DNA of 63,658 nt, the filler included, from Reticulomyxa filosa (taxonomy: Eukaryota; Protista; Foraminifera): assembly GCA_000512085.1 (NCBI GenBank). It is 18 parts of 18 records of this genome, joined end to end, with 100 filler letters (N's around TTAATTAATTAA, not from the genome) between each part and the next. Parts side by side here need not be neighbours in the genome. Positions count along the whole stretch, not along the records: positions 1 to 10,659 come from ASPP01017450.1; 17 more parts are not named here. One strand, written 5' to 3'. This document shows, piece after piece, positions 69-10,235 of this stretch. The position numbers and the translations under genes are program-made. The notes beneath the pieces were generated by a model. It ran no database searches and was not told the DNA's origin. It saw only the letters and a program-made list of their open reading frames with translations. Positions within the stretch are counted from its first letter, which is position 1, and each line of letters opens with the position of its first letter.

Positions 69-890
69 TAGCTCTTTTTACTTGTTTATTGTCACGAGAT
101 ATTTTACATGTTTAATGTCTTTTTCTGTTTTTTTAAAGTGAATATTTTATGCTTTGTATGAGTCTTAAAATTTAGGAATAGTTTCCTTTTTTTCATTTTG
201 ATTACGCGGGCATATGCAACATGTTAAGTGAGTTTGAGCGATAATCAAACTCAATAGTGCAAAAAGAAAATTTTTACAACGCGAATAACAATTTCAGCGC
301 AAATTTATTTTAACATTACAATACAAATCTCAATCTTTTGCAAGTAACAAAGCAATTTTAAATTGCAAAAAGAATTTTGGATAGCATGTGGGACGTGCTG
401 ACCATTACTTTGGCTGGCACAAGTTAATACGAAAAATATTACTCTCTGAGTGATTTTTCAATAAAAACAAGATAGTTAAATCAAAGCTGTCATTTTTGAA
501 TTACAGAAAAGATCGGACATGTATCAAGAAAAACTGTTTTGTCCTCTTTGAAATATTTCAGCATGGTAACCAATTTTTTTTTTCGTTTGCAGATTGTTAT
601 CGATATTTATGATTGCTATTGTTGCGCTGTTTTTGTGGTTTATCACACAATAATATCACATCATCAATTTCCTTTTATCATGCAAAATAAACAATAAAAT
701 GGATGAAATTTTTAAAGCAAAGCAAAGAAAAAATAGTTATATCTTATTCTCTTTACAGTGTTTGACTTCCTTTTTCAATGTTAAATGTAACACTTCACAA
801 ATTCAGTTATTTTGTTCAATTATCAAACACTTTTTCTTAAATTTACTCTTTTTTTCCATGTTATTTGCGTTTCTTTTTAAAAGAAAGCAA

Positions 891-3538
891 ATGGAGCAGG
901 AAGGTTATGCCAGAAAACCATTGCAAAAGTGGACTTTGGCAGATATCTGCAGTTAAACCAGTTTATTCGAAAGGAAATAAGAGCTTGTTGAAGGTGTTGG
1001 GATTGTTTTGTGATTGTTCAGATTGGAATGAAAGTTTAGTTGAAATTGGCAAAAAGGGAATGAGACAAGTTATAGAAATGAAAGGGACAGAATTAACAGG
1101 ACAAATGTTGGCAGACTTCACAGTACCAAAACTTCAGGATGAGTACAAACTGGGAAAACTTCCATCAATGAAGATTGTTGAAGCACTTGACAAAATTAAA
1201 AGAAATAATCCACCATCACAAACAAATGAACATAGGCCATCCATACAAATGATAACGGAAGATACAAAAAATGAGGAAAAAGAAGATGGAAGTGAAGAAC
1301 ACCAAAGCAAAAGTGAATCCAAAAATGTCTATACTATTGAGTGGATAAGTGAATATCAGGGTCTTATCGGTTTAAAAAATCTTGGAAGCACTTGTTATTT
1401 AAACTCTGCTGTACAGGTTTACGTATACAAAAACAAAATAAAAAAACAGAGTGGGATTTGAGATGAAGTGGAGTGGATTCTTGTTTGTACAGTTCATTTA
1501 TTTCACGTTTAAAAAAATTAATAGTGTTTGTTGCAAGTCAAACCACTAGTGCATCTATTCTTATTTGATCACCCATATGATTACAAGTATGATTACCAGT
1601 ATGATAGCAGCAAGGATTGGAGCATGTCAATTAGCACAGCATGGAGCAAAACAGTATATCAAGCATACACTAATCAAATAAAAAATGGAGTGTACTCTTT
1701 ATCAGCACTATTGTCATCATTGAAAAAAGTGAATCACAATTTTAGCGAAGAAAAGTCAAAAACATTCATTTGAAGGGATATCCGTGTTATTGAGTAAGTT
1801 AGAGCTTGTTTTCCTTGGTAATCAGCCATTGCAAACATTCGAAAGAATATTTCATGAAACCGAAATGGAATCCATGAAAGAAGAAGAGGAACTAACAATA
1901 GGAAAAAACCTATACAAGCAACTAACAGTACAAACAAATAGAGTTGGACAAATCTTTGATGGGATACAAGTAAAGGCTATTCAATGTGAGTATTGTGGGT
2001 ATTGTCTTCGCAAATTTGAACAATTTCGCTATATCGTCTGTCCAGTTGTATCCAGAAATCAAGTCCTTCCAATCATAGTCATTGCCAATAATACAGCTAT
2101 GTTTGAAAAAAAGGAATTGATAGTTCCATCCACCATAACCATTTATAAACTGAAAGACATTATTGCCGAAAAGATGGAGCGCTTCAAAGACAGCAAGCGT
2201 GAAAATTGGTATATTGGCTCAATATTAGAGAGGGTAAAAGTACAGACACAAGTGGGATCAGAGCCATCTTTGGAATTGGATATCGGAAGAATTCCAGATG
2301 ACATGGAAATTGGACAATTGTATAAGCGGCGTATCTTTGCCATTTATTACCCTGAGCATAACTCTCGATTGTTTGATGTGTTATGTGTGGAAGTCAAAAT
2401 AGACGGAAATGACAAATTAAACAAGCGTGCGCGCATGGTATCATTGTTGCAATTGCAAGAAGGACAAATATACAGGAAAAGAATTGATGGATATTTTAGC
2501 AGAAAAATATAAGGAATCGAAGTGGCATGTGTTCAAGATATTTATGAATAACAAATTACTACGTGAGTATTCCACTATTCAGCTTCCAATTGCTACACAT
2601 TTGCTTATTGTTCTTTCTAATTCCAATAAAAAAGAAGATAACAAGGAAAGCAATGAAAATAATAAAACAATAAAAATTATGACAATCATATCGATGAAAA
2701 CAAGGAGTATGAATCATCACAGTTCGACAGTGATGCCATGGCAAAAGAATTTTATTCCTTCTTCCTTTTCAAGGAAACACAAATTTGCAAGAATGGCACA
2801 GATGCAAAAGCAACTACATTCCAGCAATTAGAGCGAACCAAACGTATCATTGAGTTTTTGGAATTGCTCCACAATGGTAAAGCAATCAACGATTCTGAAT
2901 ATGGGTCAATATTAAAATCTTTTTGGGATAGTTATCCTATTGCTCGTACAGTTTTTTTTAAAAACATTTTCCAAAGTACTTTCATCAAAGAACAGATCTT
3001 AAGCCTTCGTTCCATTGAAAATAAGTTCGATTCATCCTTGCGCGATCACGAGCTGCTACAACAATACATTAGACATACTCTTGCGCGAATGACCATTTTC
3101 GAGAAAAATGAAATATTGCTCAAATCTTTGAATGAATCCTTACAAGAGGTGTTTGACATAGAATACGTGCTCAAAAAGCAATTTAAATGCCACTGCAGAA
3201 CTGCAATTACTGATATTGTTGTTAAAAAAAAAATGTTGATTGGCCCACAATATTTAATTATTCCTTTGAAAAGAGGCAAATATGGTCACAGTATTTCCTT
3301 TGAACAGTTGCTCAATTTGAATTCACAAACTTATCAGCTATGTGGAATATGTTGTCATTATCTAAATAGTTCAAATAATTGTCACAATGTTGCTCATGTT
3401 CGTCGATTTTATGATAACAAATGGTATGAAATTGATGACGATAATATTTTCTTCGAGGGTATATCTCTACCACAAAAAACTTTTTCCAATGCCACTGTTT
3501 TGATTTATCAAAAAATTGATACACGCATTTTATCATAA
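891..3538 (+). CDS. SAM-domain ubiquitin-specific protease (USP/C19), spliced, with 3 apparent frameshifts
   Basis: ATG at 891; removing GT-AG intron 952-1021 gives KWTLADICNWNESL...ELTGQML (SAM-like). Cys box GLKNLGSTCYLNSAVQ|CLLQ spans intron 1417-1524. His box HYLNSSNNCHNVAHVR...WYEIDDD, ending VLIYQK. The frame changes near 1755, 2470 and 2665, all in A-rich runs. Confidence 0.85.
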
Positions 3539-3875
3539 GCTTCTTGCCAAATTATTATTCAATTGGATGAGAGTATAAATTGGTTCTTTTGACATTTTTT
3601 AATATCAAAAAGAAAAATATACAGTGTTAATGACACTTACAAATTTTCACACGTTCAGATGATAAATGATACAATCATGGAAATGCTAAAAAAAAGTATA
3701 AATGCATTTTAATAATGCTCAAACGCTAAATGTAAAACTTTGTTATTTTTGGTTACTATTTTGTTGAACTACTTGCAATGGGGGTGATATTTTTTTAACT
3801 TGAAATAGACGAATCAAGTGACGAAAAATGAATGAATATTCGTTTTTTCATTGGGGAGTTAAACTTTGTGGAGGA

Positions 3876-5018
3876 ATGAATAGAAACAAGAGAAATAAGA
3901 CCCAAAAAAATAATAAAAAAAAAGAAGGAAGCCAAAGGCACGAGAGAATCAACCCAATACATTTGGTACCTGTTGTTTTTTGTTCGTTGTCAAACATAAA
4001 AAAAAAATGAAGTATATTTTTAAAAACAGACAAAGCAAATGATAAAACTGTTAGTAGAGCATTTATTTAGAACATCCTTCAGCAGTCGTTGGGGATGGAT
4101 TGAAGAATTCAATATACTTATTGCAAAATACGCAAAGTATTTTAAGCAATTGAATGTATTGAAAGGACATGTATTTGGTGTGACAAAGGTGCAATTTTCA
4201 TCAAATGGTTGTTTTATTGTGTCTTGTTCTATTGACAAAACCATTCGAATATGGGATATGCAATTAAGACAACAAATTCAAAAGTTAGAAGGACATTTGA
4301 ATATTGTTACCGGAGCACAATTTTCACCAGATGGAAGAACAATTGTATCTTGTTCTGATGATGAGACAATTAGACTGTGGGATGTATCATCAGGAAAAGA
4401 ATTGCAAGCATTGAAAGGACATGTGAATTACATTACAGATGTACAATTTTCATCAGATGGTCTTACCATTGTATCGTGTTCTCATGATAAAACAATTCGA
4501 ATGTGGGATGTGGATCAGGAAAAGAGATACAAAAATTAGAAGGAATGCATGTGGGTGTTATCACAGGAGTTCGATATTCTCCAAATGGTAATACAATTGT
4601 ATCTTGTTCAAGTGATGAAACAATTCGAATATGGGATGTACAAACAGGGAAGGAAATTAAAAAATTAGAGGGACATTTAGACGATATTACAGATGTGCAA
4701 TTTTCTCCAAATGGACTAAATATTCTATCTTGTTCAGATGATAAAACAATTCGAATATGGGATGTAGCATCAGGAAAAGAGATGCAAAGGCTTGAAGGGC
4801 ATCAAGGATGGGTAAACAGTGCTCATTTTTCACCAGATGGTCGTGTCATTGTTTCATGCTCTTTTGACAGAACAATTCGATTGTGGGACGTTGCAACAGG
4901 AAATGAGATACAAAAGTTGACAGGACATTCAGATAGCGTCACATGTGTTCAATTTTCTCCAGATGGTGAAATTCTTGTGTCATGCTCAACTGATAAAACT
5001 ATTCGACTTTGGGGATAA
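3876..5018 (+). CDS. WD40-repeat protein (7-bladed) with one frameshift near 4515
   Basis: Repeated GH...V.FSPDG..IVSCS.D.TIRIWD units in ORFs 4039-4539 and 4503-5018. N-terminal family motif GWIEEFNILIAKY. Probable short first exon from ATG 3876 with an intron at about 3966-4029. Confidence 0.85.
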
Positions 5019-5314
5019 ACAAATGAAATAATAAAAATATCTGTTTGAAATATTGCTCGAAACTGATAACAAAAAAAAAAAATATATATATATATATCAT
5101 TTTTTTTTTTAATTGATATTTTCGCAAGTACATTTATTTTGATTTATTTTATTAATAAATCTCAATCTTCTTTAAAAGTAAAACCCCTTGTACGTGACAG
5201 TGTGAACAAATAAACAACTCTACTTTGAAATACAATGTAAATTTAGCCTTTTTGTAATCAAAATGCAAGTATGTTTGGTCCTATGCAAATTCACACTTTT
5301 GACAACAATAGAGA

Positions 5315-8169
5315 TTACAGTTTAATACGTTTCTGTCGTTGGTATATTAAGACCATTACTCCAGCGTTTGTATCAGAATGCGGTTGCTTCTTTTGAATAA
5401 AATCGTCATTTACAAGATACCATTCACCATTGTAGATGTTTTTCACATAAGAAAAGTAGTGACCACCTCGACTCGTAATTCCGTTATGAATACAGGCTGC
5501 AACTAGATTGTACATCTGCTTTTGATTTGCAAATACAAGGTCTTTTAATGGAAAGGTGATGGGATGTTGATATTTAATACTTTCTCCTGTATTTGTAACG
5601 GAGCTTCGCTCCAATTGGATCATGAGAATCTTTGGTGTAGCAAGCACTCTTTTTTCGTGTAACACGATATTTCCACATAGACATGACAAAGTTTCATCTT
5701 GTATAATCGTTGTTTCTCTATAGCACTCTTTTAAGCACTCTTCCAATGTCTTTATCTCTTCAAGCATTTCTTTCGTTTTCACTTGCGTCAATGTTTTCCA
5801 TTTCTGGTTTACGTCCTATAAGTATACGTAAAAAATAAGCCACTTGCGCAAATATGGAGTTGCATTCATATTACACTATAATATATGTATCATAAGAAAG
5901 CGAACATAACTTCCAAAATCTTTGCAGGGAATGGAATAGAAGTATAATATATTTCTAAAAGATCAAGCATCTGCAATCTTTGCAGCAACCCTAGATTTAG
6001 TAAACTGGCGTTATAGTTGTTATGCTTTAGTAATTGCCTCTGTGTCTGAATAATTTCAATAATCTCTTTTTGCTCCTTTTTTTCACTAATAAGCGAAATA
6101 ATCCAATCTAGATCATATTGATTCATGGCCTTCAATTGCTCCTTTTGTTATTTGAGTTTGATTCCATCAATTCTTAAATATTTAAAATATATTGATGTCC
6201 CGTTCTTTCTTAACTGTTAATATACTCTTCCTAAGGTCGTGAATGATGCAAATGAAATGTTGGTGTTCATCCATACTCGTAAAGTCGTATACGCGATTTG
6301 GTTCAATTCTTTCGCTCCCATAATAGACCTCCAAATCCGTATCTTTGCTCAGCTGGAAGTGTGATGCACTGTAATGAGCAAACTCCAATATATCACTTCC
6401 GGAAATTGGTGAGGAAATCGAAGTCTCAAAAAAATTAATTACAGGATCGTCATTAACAATTTCAATTTGAAAAAATAGTCTAGTTGCTTCGTTTTTCTGC
6501 ATGTTATTGAGAAAAAAAAAATACACTTTTATACAATGATGGGTTATAAAAAAAATGTTCTGGCATATGACTCCAAAAAAAAAAAAAAAAAAAAGAAACG
6601 CTACAATTACATAAGGTGTAGCTATGGCAAAGAAGCCATAAGCAGAAGCATCTAAGGAAGAGAAGGTGTCACTGTCTTCCAGAAATCCAGCCCAATTTTG
6701 AAAATCCCTGTGTTTGAATCTTACGTACCCAATCTTGACTCTAAAATCTCCTTCGTATTGTTTTTGGAACTCCTCCATAAGAATACGTTTTGCCAATTGT
6801 ATCGATTCATTGCAAGGAATAATGATTTCTTGCACATTGTTAAAATGCTTCAAAACAACAGCAACAGTTTGTTTTTGAATTACTACTGGCGCCTTCACAA
6901 CTCGAAATGGCTCAATAAAATTTTGTTGTAGGTTGCAAGTTGGACACCGAGTCTTTGGCATTTTGTTGTTGTTATTGTTGGGAAGGGGGGGAAAAAAAAC
7001 CATGTGGAACACATAGCATGCAATCGTGCAACAAACGTAATAATAAAAGATTGGACAAACTGTATTGTATTCAATCCCATCGAAAAGCTTACAAATGGGA
7101 GATGCATCGACACACAATTTTCTGTACATTTTTATACCCTTTTCCAAAATTTGCGCATTGTCAATACCATTGCTCTTCAACTCTTCCCAAAACTCACAGC
7201 GGGATTTCCCACGATAATGTCCTTCTAATTCGTCCAGCACGGCATTCAACAATGAAAATGCATCATGTTGACAACCACTGGAAAAACTGCCAAAAAAAAA
7301 GAAAACAATTTTTTGAAATGTTATTATACACCTTTTGCACTTTTTGCAAACGAAAATACCTTGGGTTCAACTTGCCTACAGCTGTGCGTAGTTCTGAAGC
7401 GTCTATTTTTGTGTATTTTTTTCCATCAAACTGACGGTGTGCTTCCCAAACTAAGTTATGCCATGCAGTGGCCACTGTTTGTGATTTGGATACGCGCATT
7501 GTGAATGGCTTCTCCAGTGCAATCAATGGTCCTATTTGTAAGAGACACTACAAATTTTTTTTTTAACGTGTTTGTACGTATGTACAAAAAAAAAGTGACG
7601 GCTCTATATCCAAAAGAAGTACTCAAATAAATACGCATACATACAAAATACTCACTTGTAATCCTGCGTTCACAAAGCATGAGTTATTCTGATTTTTTAG
7701 TCCGATCAAGCCTGGATAGTTCCCAATTTCTTGCTTGTTTTTTTCTGTATTCATAAAACATGTTGTTTGCAAAAGCCTATTTAAAAAAGCGTTTTGATAG
7801 CTTGTTTTTTTCATGCCTCTCTCTTGTTCTTCTTCTTCCGATTCATCACCATTTTGTGTAGCGTATCTGATTTCCTTCAGACTCGTTATGACTTTATCTG
7901 CCATACTTTTATTCTTGATCATCTCTATACACTTCGTTTCTGTTAGTCCATCGAGAGTCTTTGCACTTAACTTACGTTCTTTTTGCAGTTTAGTCAATCG
8001 TGTTGAAACAAACCTGGGCAAACTATTCACCCATGCTGTTTTTTGTATTATTTTACCGTTATTTTCAATATGTGCCGCAGTTTGGTGTCGGTCAACAGAT
8101 TGTGAGATATATATTGCCTGACATATCTTCGTTCGTCCATTCACTGAACTTCTTGGATTTGAAAGACAT
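5315..8169 (-). CDS. Second SAM-domain USP deubiquitinase, multi-exon, with a lesion near 6150-6190
   Basis: ATG 8169 MSFKSKKFSEWTNEDMS joins AWVNSL through a GC-AG intron at 8117-8036 (SAM-like). Cys box GLKNQNNSCFVNAGLQ|CLLQ spans intron 7655-7548. QHDA motif after the next intron. His box HNGITSRGGHYFSYVK...WYLVNDD; stop at 5315. Confidence 0.85.
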
Positions 8170-8530
8170 CTCAATAAAAATAACAAACGCCGTCCCAACT
8201 TACAAATTTTGGCAAAAAAAAACATCTCACTCCAACTTTTCCCAAGTTTTTGAAACAATTATTTTCATGGTCTTAGTTCGATTCAGAACGATGTTTAAAC
8301 TGATTGCACCAAACTCGTACTTGAGTATTTTCAAATGTTGGAAAGAAATTAATTTTAATCATTTAGGGCTTCTTTTCAATCAAAAAAAGGATTTAGTAAA
8401 GTAAGCGTGTGTTTTGAATTTATGTATAGGTGTATGATTGCCATGGACACAAATCATTGTGGGACGGATTAAAAGAACTTTTTTCCTTCAAAAAGTTAAG
8501 AGAAGTGTTTATTTTGTTAGGGGATCAAGT

Positions 8531-10235
8531 ATGTCGCAAAAAAAATTGATAGAACTGACATGCCAAGAAGTTGCAGGTATTTTAATCGCGTTGTGTCTCA
8601 TTCTTTTGATTTGCATTTGGTTTTTAGAAAAAGAGCTCTGCTGAAATAAACAGAGTGGATATCTAGCTTTGACAACCTCACTGGAGCGGAGAAAATAAAA
8701 GAGCAAATAATACAACAAGAGATTGATGGTGCTGCTTTGTGTGCAGTCTCATCAAAAAAGATTTGGAGGAAATTGGTTTGACTGTGAACCCAGAGGGTTT
8801 ATTGACTGCGATAAAGAGTCGTTCGGCAAGAGAGTCTGTGTTGACCACAAATATGGAGGGTGAGAGTGAATTTGATATCAATCTCTGCGCAAAATCAAAA
8901 AATAGAAAGATCACAGGATGTCATAAAAATATGAAGATTGTAGAGCTAAGACTGAATATTGCAGAACAAACAGGCCTTCAAAACCTCTTGTTGTTTGCTG
9001 GGTCCAAAGAGTTATCAAACGAGAACGTTAAGCATTAACATTTGTACATACGAATGAGTTTTGATTAGTCACATGTGCAATTTCTAAATCATAGGCAACG
9101 TTGGCATCTTATGGAATTTTTCCCCCACGTACAAACATATCCGCAATGTTTAACACTGCTGGTGGTACTTCCAGTTAATTGTCCCAAATAAAAAAATACG
9201 TACTTTTTAAAAAAAAAAGCAGTGTCCATAATTTTTTTTTTTAAAAAAGAGAACTCCATTCGAATCCGGAGATTTAATCCAGACGATCCCAATATCATAC
9301 TGACAACAGAGAAAGATTGTATTTCTCTTGAGGACAGTGTCAGTTGTCTTCGAGCGAAAATGCCTTGTGGACATGCAATTGGGTGTTACACCATGTTTGA
9401 GTACATGAAATCTGTGTTAAACAGGGACATGTATTCCTACAAAATCCTCTGCCCTGCTGTGATTGAAGATAAGATCAAGACGACGTATACTATTTGTGGC
9501 AAGGAGTGGGATTGGCAGCTTGTTGCTGCTGTTGCAGATTTGAACGAAAATGAATATACACAGTATACAGATATCATTACAAATCGTTTTATGGAGGCAA
9601 AAGAAATTAAGACTTGCCCTTCGTGTCTTGGAAAATGCATAAGAGGGAAATATTTAAATGTTTTTAGGTAAAAATTGTCCTTTTTTTTTTTTGAGTATTA
9701 TGTCAATCTCAAAAAAAATACCTCATTACAGGACAAAGTGCTTAGGTTGCAATAGCGATTTTTGTTGGGCGTGTGAGCAACCTTGGCAAAGCGAAGGACA
9801 ACAAATATGTGGAAACCAAAACTGTCCATTGTGGGAAACCCAAAAGTTATTAGAAACTTGCGATCTCAAAGTGAGTTCTGATGTCAAAATGCCTCCATTT
9901 CGTGCTTGTCCCGCTTGCTTATCAGTTCCAATGTATTTTTTTGCTATCTTTATTCTGTTGTTTTTTTTTTTTGCAAAGTAACGGATCACTATCACCACTT
10001 TTTTAGCTCATTCACCATAACAAAGCCTGCAAGCATATCAAATGCGCTGGTTGTGGAAAGAATTTTTGCTTTTCTTGTTTGGAATTTTCTCAAGGTATTC
10101 CAATCTGTTTTTAAAAGAATCTAAAATTGCAAGAGGTGCTCTTGAAAAAAAAAAACAGATGCAGAAGGGAAAAAATGGAGCTGTGGCAGTCCATTTGATC
10201 AATGCAAGACTGCTGATCGGCAAAAATTGAAATAA
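8531..10235 (+). CDS. SAM - ubiquitin-like - RBR (RING1-IBR-RING2) E3 ubiquitin ligase
   Basis: Exon 1 MSQKKLIELTCQEVA, intron 8577-8653, then EWISSF..EIDGAAL..DLEEIG (SAM; frameshift at the A6 run near 8755). UBL LLFAGSKELSNEN|ATLASYGI..MFNTAGG. RING1 MPCGHAI..ILCP; IBR CPSC..C..C..DFCWACEQPW; RING2 CPAC..ACKHIKC..C..FCFSC. Last exon ends RQKLK* at 10235. Confidence 0.85.

What the first reader, a model, noticed from the sequence alone, without database searches (positions are those of the whole stretch)
891..10235. Clustered SAM-tagged ubiquitin writer/eraser module: SAM-USP, WD40, SAM-USP, SAM-UBL-RBR
Seen: in one ungapped contig, two USP deubiquitinases and an RBR E3 ligase all begin with an alignable SAM-like domain (RKPLQKWTLADICNWNESL / SKKFSEWTNEDMSAWVNSL / QKKLIELTCQEVAEWISSF, then ELTGQML / KLSAKTL / EIDGAAL). 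A WD40 gene sits between them. The SAM domains appear only after splicing. Known: SAM domains form homo- and hetero-oligomers, and RBRs and USPs write and erase ubiquitin chains. I do not know SAM-USP or SAM-UBL-RBR as standard architectures. Inference: a co-encoded, SAM-assembled ubiquitin signalling complex, possibly defence-like, with WD40 as sensor or substrate adaptor.
Basis: partly seen in the sequence, partly recalled or inferred. Interest (0 to 1): 0.88.

Follow-up and report, generated by a model that had tools for sequence, protein, structure and literature searches.

The report
Paired SAM-tagged deubiquitinase and ubiquitin ligase
In the foraminifer Reticulomyxa filosa, a ubiquitin-removing enzyme and a ubiquitin-adding enzyme that share an unusual SAM-like front end sit head to head as a gene pair that recurs on at least seven contigs, which suggests a matched writer/eraser unit not described before.

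Summary
The contig is from Reticulomyxa filosa. It carries four spliced genes:
- G1: SAM-like USP, 891-3538 (+).
- A 7-blade WD40 gene, 4039-5018 (+).
- G3: SAM-like USP, 8169-5315 (-).
- G4: SAM-like-UBL-RBR, 8531-10235 (+).

Pfam does not call the N-termini SAM. A profile-profile comparison with 20 canonical SAM domains of the same genome gives 97% probability, against at most 2.8% for shuffled templates. All 18 copies in the genome have a phase-1 intron at the same site of the module.

The main new result is that the head-to-head SAM-USP / SAM-UBL-RBR pair recurs on seven contigs, in at least four or five diverged lineages. The two partners diverge by similar amounts. The SAM-like module was found only on these two gene types.

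Caveats:
- G1 has three 1-base frameshifts. WD40 and G4 have one each, and G4's lies inside its SAM. No reads were available to check them.
- WD40 belongs to a family with thousands of places in the genome, so its presence is expected by chance.
- SAM-SAM binding and any defence role are untested.

Verdict: a real, lineage-specific E3-DUB gene cassette and a new variant of a known kind. The four-gene complex is not supported.

The parts
891..3538 (+). G1: SAM-like USP gene, apparently disrupted. Exons 891-951, 1022-1416 and 1525-3538, with 1-base frameshifts at about 1751, 2457 and 2667. GenBank splits it into two proteins, P0158 (314 aa) and RFI_20318/P0155 (535 aa).
   Evidence: Spliced model. 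Pfam UCH. Comparison with intact paralogs C9490 and C48601. Annotated proteins.
915..1218 (+). SAM-like module of G1, in two exons split by the phase-1 intron 952-1021
   Evidence: hhalign. ESM features give SAM clusters at 0.90. The paralog P0156 matches Pfam SAM_Ste50p at 16.6 bits, below the cut-off.
4039..5018 (+). Stand-alone 7-blade WD40 gene with a 1-base frameshift at about 4513-4517. Probably an unrelated neighbour.
   Evidence: Pfam WD40 at 130 and 182 bits. The genome family has 7,501 candidate places.
5315..8169 (-). G3: intact SAM-like USP gene, 733 aa, 8 exons: 8169-8118, 8035-7656, 7547-7360, 7286-7061, 6952-6611, 6496-6215, 6141-5911, 5815-5315. The catalytic Cys (NNSCF), His (GGHY) and Asp (NDD) are present.
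   Evidence: Model. Pfam UCH 62.4 bits. The second copy, C32945, is 98% identical in exons with only an in-frame indel.
7839..8169 (-). SAM-like module of G3. Its phase-1 intron, 8117-8036, is of the GC-AG type, and the GC donor is kept in copy C32945.
8170..8530 (.). 361-bp spacer between the divergent start codons of G3 and G4. Presumed shared bidirectional promoter (inferred).
   Evidence: Gene models. The same head-to-head layout occurs on 6 other contigs.
8531..10235 (+). G4: SAM-like-UBL-RBR gene, 424 aa including one X. Exons 8531-8576, 8654-9026 (frameshift in the A6 run 8754-8759), 9095-9173, 9250-9667, 9732-9924, 10007-10094, 10159-10235.
   Evidence: Model. Sub-threshold IBR matches. 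ARIH1 is the only PDB match of the family profile. UBL aligned to P0151 at E 1e-10.
8531..8856 (+). SAM-like module of G4, with the phase-1 intron 8577-8653. It is broken by the 1-base frameshift at 8754-8759.
   Evidence: A local SAM HMM of this genome gives 11.9 bits at residues 10-55. hhalign gives 93.7% for G4 alone.
8865..9173 (+). Ubiquitin-like domain of G4, ending in GG and split by intron 9027-9094
   Evidence: Alignment to the UBL of the paralog P0151, which passes the Pfam ubiquitin cut-off.
9250..10094 (+). RBR core. The RING1-like part keeps only one zinc site (PCGH...CP...C). It is followed by the IBR and by RING2 with the catalytic-type motif ACKHIKC.
   Evidence: Alignment A2. 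PDB profile search. Pfam IBR at E 0.004 and 1.7e-4 on exons 6 and 7.

Best explanation
The core of the finding is a two-gene cassette specific to this lineage. A USP deubiquitinase and a UBL-RBR ubiquitin ligase are transcribed divergently from a short shared spacer, and each begins with the same two-exon SAM-like module. In the window the cassette is G3 (minus strand) and G4 (plus strand).

Proposed mechanism:
- The two genes are co-expressed.
- The SAM-like modules bring ligase and deubiquitinase together, as a heterodimer or a polymer.
- The DUB then limits or edits what the ligase writes, including the ligase's own ubiquitination, as in other E3-DUB pairs.
- The UBL may dock to or auto-inhibit the RBR, as in Parkin and HOIL-1L.

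Shown here: the domain content, SAM homology, the shared intron position, repeated co-duplication of the pair, and purifying selection on the catalytic exons.

Inferred only: co-expression, SAM-SAM binding, and the functional relation between the two enzymes.

G1 is an extra SAM-USP of another sub-lineage. It has lost its partner and looks to be decaying. The WD40 gene is a bystander.
For: 1. Recurrence. Head-to-head SAM-USP / SAM-(SAM)-UBL-RBR pairs occur on the window and on C9490, C9491, C38989, C38990, C38991 and C34366. Two contigs, C35416 and C9791, show one partner's SAM exon with about 1 kb of upstream sequence and no partner. That is just short of the 1.0-1.1 kb spacing in their sub-lineage, so they say nothing either way. 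The only locus where a partner is clearly missing at the expected distance is the window's G1.

2. Co-divergence. Against C38989, the RBR N-terminus is 49-54% identical and the USP exon 2 is 48-49% identical in C38991 and C34366. The pair was therefore copied as a unit and kept.

3. The SAM-like module is restricted to these genes. The profile A4 finds 20 places on 14 contigs. The contigs I fetched and compared carry USP or RBR N-termini.

4. Shared gene structure. All 18 copies have an AG acceptor 2 nt before the W codon, which marks a phase-1 intron at the same site in USPs and RBRs. The canonical SAM_1 matches of this genome run across that point in one open frame, without stops.

5. SAM homology. 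hhalign gives 97.2% probability, E 4e-11, over the whole SAM model. One hundred column-shuffled templates reach at most 2.8%, and the reversed template 0.2%.

6. Constraint. pN/pS is 0.18-0.20 on the RING1-IBR exon. The second copy of G3 differs by an in-frame indel only.

7. The catalytic residues are present in G3 and G4.
Against: - No RNA data. No sequencing runs were listed, so splicing, the start sites and co-expression are models only.
- G4 carries a frameshift inside its SAM-like domain. It could be a pyrosequencing-type error at an A6 run, or it could be real.
- Pfam SAM models do not reach threshold.
- The AlphaFold models were of low confidence, pLDDT 51 and 40, and Foldseek found nothing. 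The fold is therefore not shown.
- Complex prediction gave no answer.
- RING1 lacks the ligands of one zinc site in the whole family, so ligase activity is not certain.
- Some copies are 89-95% identical in DNA and may be alleles or recent segmental copies. This inflates the count of seven.
Confidence: 0.6

Rival explanations
1. The adjacency is only a by-product of segmental duplication. One chunk of DNA that happened to hold a USP and an RBR was copied many times in a repeat-rich genome, and the two enzymes have no functional link.
For: There are many copies, some 89-95% identical at the DNA level including non-coding parts. Frameshifts occur between copies. The assembly is highly fragmented, with 50,809 contigs.
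Against: The pair is kept in lineages whose proteins are only about 50% identical, or 26-36% between sub-families. Both partners have diverged by similar amounts. The catalytic exons are under purifying selection, pN/pS about 0.2. Both genes carry the same private SAM-like module with the same intron, which is hard to explain without a shared role.
Confidence: 0.15
2. One reading: a four-gene, SAM-assembled complex of G1, WD40, G3 and G4, with WD40 as sensor or adaptor, acting in defence.
For: All four genes lie within 9.3 kb. The copy-number expansion, and fast amino-acid change in the SAM of one RBR sub-family (pN/pS 2.06 against 0.20, Fisher p 0.015), are features often seen in conflict-related genes.
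Against: WD40 has no SAM-like module. Its family has 7,501 candidate places in 101.9 Mb, so a 10.7-kb contig would hold one about half the time. No WD40 lies on the other pair-bearing contigs, though they are only 2-4.5 kb long. G1 has three frameshifts and lacks the partner RBR that its paralogs have about 0.7 kb upstream. No defence-type domain was seen.
Confidence: 0.07
3. The N-terminal module is not a SAM domain. It is another small helical domain that merely resembles SAM in a few motifs.
For: There is no Pfam SAM_1 or SAM_2 match even at E up to 10. The only named match is SAM_Ste50p at 16.6 bits on a paralog, below its cut-off of 21. AlphaFold confidence was low and there were no fold matches.
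Against: The profile-profile match covers the whole SAM model at 97.2%, and the shuffled and reversed controls are clean. SAM-clan clusters dominate the ESM-feature neighbours of two different copies. UniRef's own pipeline names RFI_13115 a SAM domain protein.
Confidence: 0.1

Closest known systems
Parkin (UBL-RING0-RBR) and its opposing USPs (USP30, USP15, USP8)
   Same: An N-terminal UBL followed by an RBR ligase, and a USP-class enzyme acting on the same marks (from my own knowledge of the family).
   Different: Parkin has no SAM domain. G4 has no RING0: only about 20 residues separate the UBL from RING1. The Parkin genes are not linked in the genome. RING1 of G4 keeps only one zinc site.
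LUBAC (HOIP, HOIL-1L, SHARPIN) with its bound deubiquitinases OTULIN and CYLD-SPATA2
   Same: RBR ligases, one of them of the UBL-RBR type, that physically recruit their own erasers through dedicated docking domains. This is the working principle proposed here (from my own knowledge).
   Different: Docking in LUBAC uses PUB/PIM and UBL/UBA contacts, not SAM. The DUBs are OTU and CYLD types. There is no divergent gene pair.
ARIH1/HHARI (Ariadne RBR)
   Same: It is the only solved structure matched by the family profile of the RING1-IBR exon, at residues 201-281, E 0.0039. The RING2 motif C-x-H...C is alike.
   Different: ARIH1 has an acidic/UBA-like N-terminus and an Ariadne domain, with no SAM and no UBL. 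Its RING1 is a complete C3HC4.
SAM-containing RING ligases LRSAM1 and BFAR
   Same: A SAM domain in a ubiquitin ligase (from my own knowledge; a review listed holds the terms 'sterile alpha motif' and 'RBR', but I did not open it).
   Different: They are plain RING ligases, not RBR. The SAM is internal or C-terminal. No matching SAM-tagged DUB partner is known.
USP4/USP11/USP15 (DUSP-UBL USPs)
   Same: A USP catalytic domain interrupted by a large insert between the Cys and His boxes. DUSP-type USPs are among the nearest relatives in the global search (5 of 70).
   Different: Their N-terminus is DUSP-UBL, not SAM. None of the 70 nearest full-length USPs from elsewhere has a Pfam SAM domain.
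SAM-SAM hetero-pairs such as Ste11-Ste50 or Ph-Scm
   Same: SAM domains that pair two different proteins. The best named Pfam match of the paralog module is SAM_Ste50p.
   Different: Those pairs join kinases, adaptors or Polycomb proteins. Binding has not been shown here.

Membership tests
USP deubiquitinase (peptidase C19, Pfam UCH PF00443) | Match to the family model above its curated cut-off | tested here: met
   G3 C-terminal exon 62.4 bits, G1 C-terminal part 29.7 bits, cut-off 23.9. Annotated G1 N-terminal part P0158, 46 bits over model positions 1-87.
USP deubiquitinase (peptidase C19, Pfam UCH PF00443) | Catalytic Cys box, His box and Asp/Asn | tested here: met
   Read directly from the models. 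G3: GLKNQNNSCFVNAGLQ, GGHYFSY, VNDD. G1: GLKNLGSTCYLNSAVQ, NCHNVAHV, IDDD. G1's reading frame is broken three times.
RBR E3 ligase (RING1-IBR-RING2) | RING1 with the full C3HC4 set of zinc ligands | tested here: not met
   Across 7 family members only PCGH...CP(x)nC is kept. The first CxxC and the third pair are absent (alignment A2).
RBR E3 ligase (RING1-IBR-RING2) | IBR and RING2 (Rcat) matching the IBR models, with a catalytic Cys | tested here: inconclusive
   Searched exon by exon. IBR_1 gives 17.5 bits on exon 6 and IBR gives 22.1 bits on exon 7, both below their cut-offs of 27 and 24.3. The motif CPAC...ACKHIKC..C..FC..C is present. The family profile hits only ARIH1 in the PDB, E 0.0039. 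The joined protein was not searched.
SAM domain (Pfam SAM_1 PF00536, SAM_2 PF07647) | Match to a curated SAM model above its cut-off | tested here: not met
   No match on contig C17450 in the six-frame genome scans. No match on the exon pieces at E up to 10. The complete module of paralog P0156 gives only SAM_Ste50p at 16.6 bits, cut-off 21.
SAM domain (Pfam SAM_1 PF00536, SAM_2 PF07647) | Homology to bona fide SAM domains by profile-profile comparison | tested here: met
   hhalign of 8 modules against 20 SAM_1-positive domains of the same genome: 97.2%, E 4e-11, template columns 1-64. Shuffled templates reach at most 2.8% and the reversed template 0.2%.
SAM domain (Pfam SAM_1 PF00536, SAM_2 PF07647) | Five-helix bundle fold | tested here: inconclusive
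   The AlphaFold2 model of the exon-2 piece, which lacks helix 1, shows four helices at pLDDT 51. The tandem modules of the paralog gave pLDDT 40. Foldseek found no match.
SAM domain (Pfam SAM_1 PF00536, SAM_2 PF07647) | Homo- or hetero-oligomerisation | not testable with these tools
   Complex prediction on the SAM modules of the paralogous pair gave no answer, neither support nor evidence against.
Ubiquitin-like domain (PF00240) | Match to the ubiquitin model | tested here: inconclusive
   The G4 exon pieces give no match. The paralog P0151 and its source ORF L013:2329-3189 pass the cut-off of 25.4, at 25.7 and 26.5 bits. G4 aligns to that region at E 1e-10 and ends in GG.
WD40 beta-propeller (PF00400) | Repeated WD40 units forming a propeller | tested here: met
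   Seven repeats, 130 and 182 bits on the two frame pieces.

The most novel reading that the evidence does not exclude
The pairs are self-contained 'matched writer/eraser' cassettes. Each copy's ligase and deubiquitinase recognise each other through a cognate, fast-diverging SAM pair. The family is expanding and diversifying as a conflict or self/non-self system in this giant multinucleate cell. That would make it a eukaryotic counterpart of the bacterial defence operons that couple a ubiquitin-like conjugating enzyme with its own isopeptidase.
Probability: 0.15. Interest if true: 0.8.

Novelty: new variant of a known kind. Interest (0 to 1): 0.6.

Why it matters
E3-DUB partnerships are a central theme of ubiquitin signalling, but they are normally found by biochemistry. 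Here the genome itself marks the partnership in three ways:
- a divergent gene pair;
- co-duplication of the pair as a unit;
- a private SAM-like module, with the same intron, on both enzymes.

Neither SAM-USP nor SAM-UBL-RBR turned up in the literature searches. No SAM was found among the 70 nearest full-length USPs elsewhere.

If the SAM modules do pair the two enzymes, this would be a simple natural system for studying how a ligase and its eraser are matched. It would also let one ask how such specificity diversifies among paralogous pairs. Finally, it adds a concrete lineage-specific gene family to the poorly explored foraminiferal genomes.

Tried and rejected
- **Pfam SAM models.** No match on the exon pieces or in the six-frame scans of the genome.
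- **Structure.** Two AlphaFold2 jobs had low confidence: the exon-2 piece of G1 with an 8-row alignment, and the tandem modules of C9490 alone. Foldseek against the PDB then gave nothing usable.
- **Complex prediction.** Run on the SAM module of the C9490 USP (P0156 5-85) against the SAM modules of its partner RBR (P0151 22-165). The result was no answer, neither support nor evidence against.
- **Reads.** The look-up of sequencing runs listed none. Read laying could therefore not be used, and neither the splicing nor the frameshifts could be checked.
- **Global representative search** with the last exon of G3. No relative above 41% identity. The top scores are tandem multi-USP proteins of mammals and birds without SAM.
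- **My first G1 model was wrong.** I had placed introns at 1729-1798 and 2610-2704 and a frameshift at 2435. The intact paralogs show that these stretches are coding and that G1 has 1-base frameshifts at about 1751, 2457 and 2667.
- **Partner RBR upstream of G1.** None in 1-890 on either strand. Homology to the C9491 spacer stops at about 805.
- **Viral or mobile-element origin.** Not pursued, because the genes have ordinary spliceosomal introns and the contig's base composition is even throughout.
- **Joined models.** Those tools received single exons by reference or database proteins. Joined models were used only inside run_python for local alignments, HMM and hhalign comparisons.

Full report
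**Origin and gene models.** The piece is contig C17450 of a 101.9-Mb assembly in 50,809 contigs. Database proteins encoded on it and on paralogous contigs are named Reticulomyxa filosa (RFI_20318, RFI_13114 to RFI_13118). It is therefore nuclear DNA of a foraminifer. It has about 33% GC and short GT-AG introns.

I built the models from the six-frame translations:
- G1, a USP on the plus strand, 891-3538.
- A WD40 gene, 4039-5018.
- G3, a USP on the minus strand, 8169-5315. It has 8 exons, introns of 73-114 nt, and encodes 733 aa with no break.
- G4, on the plus strand, 8531-10235. It has 7 introns of 64-82 nt and encodes 424 aa.

The start codons of G3 and G4 face away from each other across 361 bp.

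**Check of the observation.**
- USP is confirmed by Pfam for both genes, and the catalytic Cys, His and Asp can be read in both.
- WD40 is confirmed, with seven blades.
- G4 reads as SAM-like, then UBL, then RING1-like, IBR and RING2. Searched exon by exon, the IBR models stay just under threshold. A profile of the RING1-IBR exon from seven paralogs hits ARIH1, and only ARIH1, in the PDB at E 0.0039. RING2 carries the catalytic-type motif ACKHIKC.
- The UBL of G4 aligns at E 1e-10 with that of the paralog P0151, which passes the Pfam ubiquitin cut-off.
- RING1 has lost the ligands of one of its two zinc sites in the whole family.

G1 was compared with the uninterrupted 654-aa ORF of paralog C48601. 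It has 16 internal indels, of which 13 are multiples of three and three are single bases, at about 1751, 2457 and 2667. GenBank accordingly splits G1 into two proteins. The WD40 gene shifts frame at about 4513-4517. G4 shifts frame in an A6 run at 8754-8759, inside its SAM-like domain. The three shifts in G1 and the one in G4 lie in or beside A runs; the WD40 shift is not in a clear run. They may be sequencing errors. Against that, the paralogous contigs carry long intact ORFs, so for G1 real decay is the more likely reading. No reads could be obtained to decide.

**Is the N-terminal module a SAM domain?** Curated Pfam models say no. There is no match on the contig in genome-wide scans that find more than 120 canonical SAM domains elsewhere. 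There is none on the exon pieces. On the complete module of paralog P0156 there is only a sub-threshold SAM_Ste50p match of 16.6 bits.

More sensitive tests say yes.
- An HMM built from 20 canonical SAM domains of this same genome aligns to the N-terminus of each protein in the right register. The scores are weak: G4 11.9 bits, G1 2.3 and G3 2.8.
- hhalign of eight modules against that canonical alignment gives 97.2% probability, E 4e-11, over template columns 1-64. One hundred column-shuffled templates never exceed 2.8%, and the reversed template gives 0.2% (an earlier version).
- Protein-language-model neighbours of the G1 and G3 pieces are dominated by SAM-clan clusters, at 0.90 and 0.87.
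- UniRef names RFI_13115 a 'SAM domain-containing protein'.

The fold itself was not shown. Both AlphaFold jobs were of low confidence and Foldseek found nothing. I take the module to be a divergent SAM domain, with about 90% confidence.

**The main new result: a recurring divergent pair.** Searching the genome with the window's exons produced paralogs, and I fetched their contigs. On C9491 and C9490 a G1-type SAM-USP lies head to head with a gene encoding two tandem SAM-like modules, a UBL and an RBR. On C38989, C38990, C38991 and C34366 a SAM-UBL-RBR lies head to head with a SAM-USP. With G3/G4 in the window, that makes seven contigs.

Some of these are close copies. C9490 and C9491 are 93% identical in DNA, and C38989 and C38990 are 89% identical. 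Even so, they represent at least four or five lineages whose proteins are only 26-54% identical. Two contigs, C35416 and C9791, show one partner's SAM exon with about 1 kb of upstream sequence and no partner. That is just short of the 1.0-1.1 kb spacing seen in their sub-lineage, so they say nothing either way. The only locus where a partner is clearly missing at the expected distance is the window's G1.

The partners have diverged by similar amounts. Against C38989, the RBR N-terminus is 49-54% identical and the USP exon 2 is 48-49% identical in C38991 and C34366. This is what duplication of the pair as a unit predicts.

A profile of the module finds only 20 places on 14 contigs in the whole genome, and the ones I inspected are N-termini of USPs or RBRs of this family. 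In all 18 copies examined, an AG acceptor lies exactly two bases before the conserved W codon. That marks a phase-1 intron at the same site in both gene types. The canonical SAM_1 matches of the genome run across that point in one open frame, without stops. G3's intron is of the GC-AG type, and the GC donor is conserved in its second copy. The module on the ligase and on the deubiquitinase is therefore one and the same genetic element.

**Selection.** Between recent copies, the RING1-IBR exon has pN/pS of 0.18-0.20 and the USP bodies 0.43-0.57. The second copy of G3 (C32945) is 98.1% identical in exons with one in-frame indel. The introns and the spacer are 97.0% and 94.7% identical, with 23 and 20 gap columns. 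The genes are, or recently were, under coding constraint.

In one RBR sub-family the SAM module changes fast. There are 23 non-synonymous and 3 synonymous differences in 66 codons, pN/pS 2.06, against 0.20 for the RING exon of the same copies (Fisher p 0.015). The USP SAM modules give 0.26-0.37. The numbers are small, so this is a lead and not a result.

**WD40 and G1.** The WD40 protein has no SAM-like module. Its family is enormous: 7,501 candidate places in the first look, every scored candidate positive, and best paralogs 57-60% identical. At about one place per 14 kb, a 10.7-kb contig would carry one roughly half the time. The first-look candidates are a loose count, so this is a rough figure. 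The other pair-bearing contigs hold no WD40 but are only 2-4.5 kb long, so linkage can be neither shown nor excluded. Chance is the economical reading.

G1 belongs to the C9490/C9491 sub-family, at 75-78% DNA identity. The homology ends about 85 bp upstream of its start codon. No RBR start is present in the 890 bp upstream, where its paralogs have one about 0.7 kb away. Together with the three frameshifts, this makes G1 look like an orphaned, decaying copy.

**How it most likely works.** E3 ligases and deubiquitinases often act as bound pairs. The DUB protects the ligase from its own ubiquitination or trims its products. Examples from established knowledge are LUBAC with OTULIN and CYLD, and Parkin with USP30 or USP8.

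Here the two genes share a short divergent spacer, which would give coordinated transcription. They also share a private SAM-like module. SAM domains typically form homo- and hetero-oligomers. I therefore propose that the SAM modules join each ligase to its deubiquitinase. Domain content, homology and genomic coupling are shown. Co-expression, binding and enzymatic relation are inferred.

**Novelty.** Text searches found no description of SAM-USP or SAM-RBR proteins. None of the 70 nearest full-length USPs in a library of 1.8 billion representatives has a Pfam SAM domain, although a divergent SAM would be missed there as it is here. The SAM-SAM-UBL region of the paralog finds only R. filosa proteins among 5.8 billion sequences. 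A partial USP of the foraminifer Bolivina argentea is a distant relative of G3's catalytic domain. I rate this as a new variant of a known kind: an E3-DUB partnership, here with new architectures and a conserved gene cassette.

**Limits.**
Those tools saw single exons by reference or database proteins. Joined models were used only in local scripts.
- No RNA or read evidence was available.
- The contigs are short, so neighbours beyond 2-4 kb are unknown.

Noticed in passing
window 8036-8117 (minus strand); L010 (C32945): The first intron of G3 is a GC-AG intron (donor GCAATA). The same GC donor is kept in the second copy of the gene.
   Followed up: partly
window 4039-5018 and the whole genome: The WD40 gene belongs to a very large family of highly regular repeats. 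The first look gave 7,501 candidate places. Many are stand-alone ORFs of about 295 aa, and others sit inside ORFs of 1,000-1,900 aa.
   Followed up: partly
alignment A2 (window 9252-9665 and paralogs on L035-L041): RING1 of this RBR family keeps only one of the two zinc sites (PCGH...CP..C). The first CxxC is replaced by residues such as ITLDDD in all members.
   Followed up: partly
L038 1749-1943 and L039 2677-2871 (minus strand): The SAM module of one RBR sub-family shows 23 non-synonymous and 3 synonymous differences between two recent copies (pN/pS about 2). The RING1-IBR exon of the same copies gives 0.20 (Fisher p 0.015).
   Followed up: partly
L038 (C38990) about 1985-2090, minus strand: A tandem duplication of about 50 nt repeats the start codon and first exon (MEQWTVEEVV) of the RBR gene.
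   Followed up: no
window 699-1416 and 1850-3538: GenBank annotates G1 as two separate proteins. P0158 starts at an upstream ATG (699) and keeps part of the first intron as coding. P0155 (RFI_20318) bridges one frameshift with a tiny intron. The paralog annotation P0156 uses the splice proposed here.
   Followed up: yes
whole genome (G000): Canonical SAM domains are abundant, with at least 122 SAM_1 and 129 SAM_2 matches. USP exons give at least 154 matches. Canonical SAM and USP share a contig only once (C18454), and canonical SAM and IBR twice (C22423, C27208).
   Followed up: no
L012 1208-1750 and L013 2329-2760: The RBR partner of the G1-type USPs has two tandem SAM-like modules without the intron. 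The first is shortened and lacks the helix-2 region.
   Followed up: partly
P0001, P0003: The top-scoring hits of the global USP search are proteins with 3-10 tandem USP domains from a pocket gopher and a snowy owl. They are probably fused models of tandem USP gene arrays.
   Followed up: no
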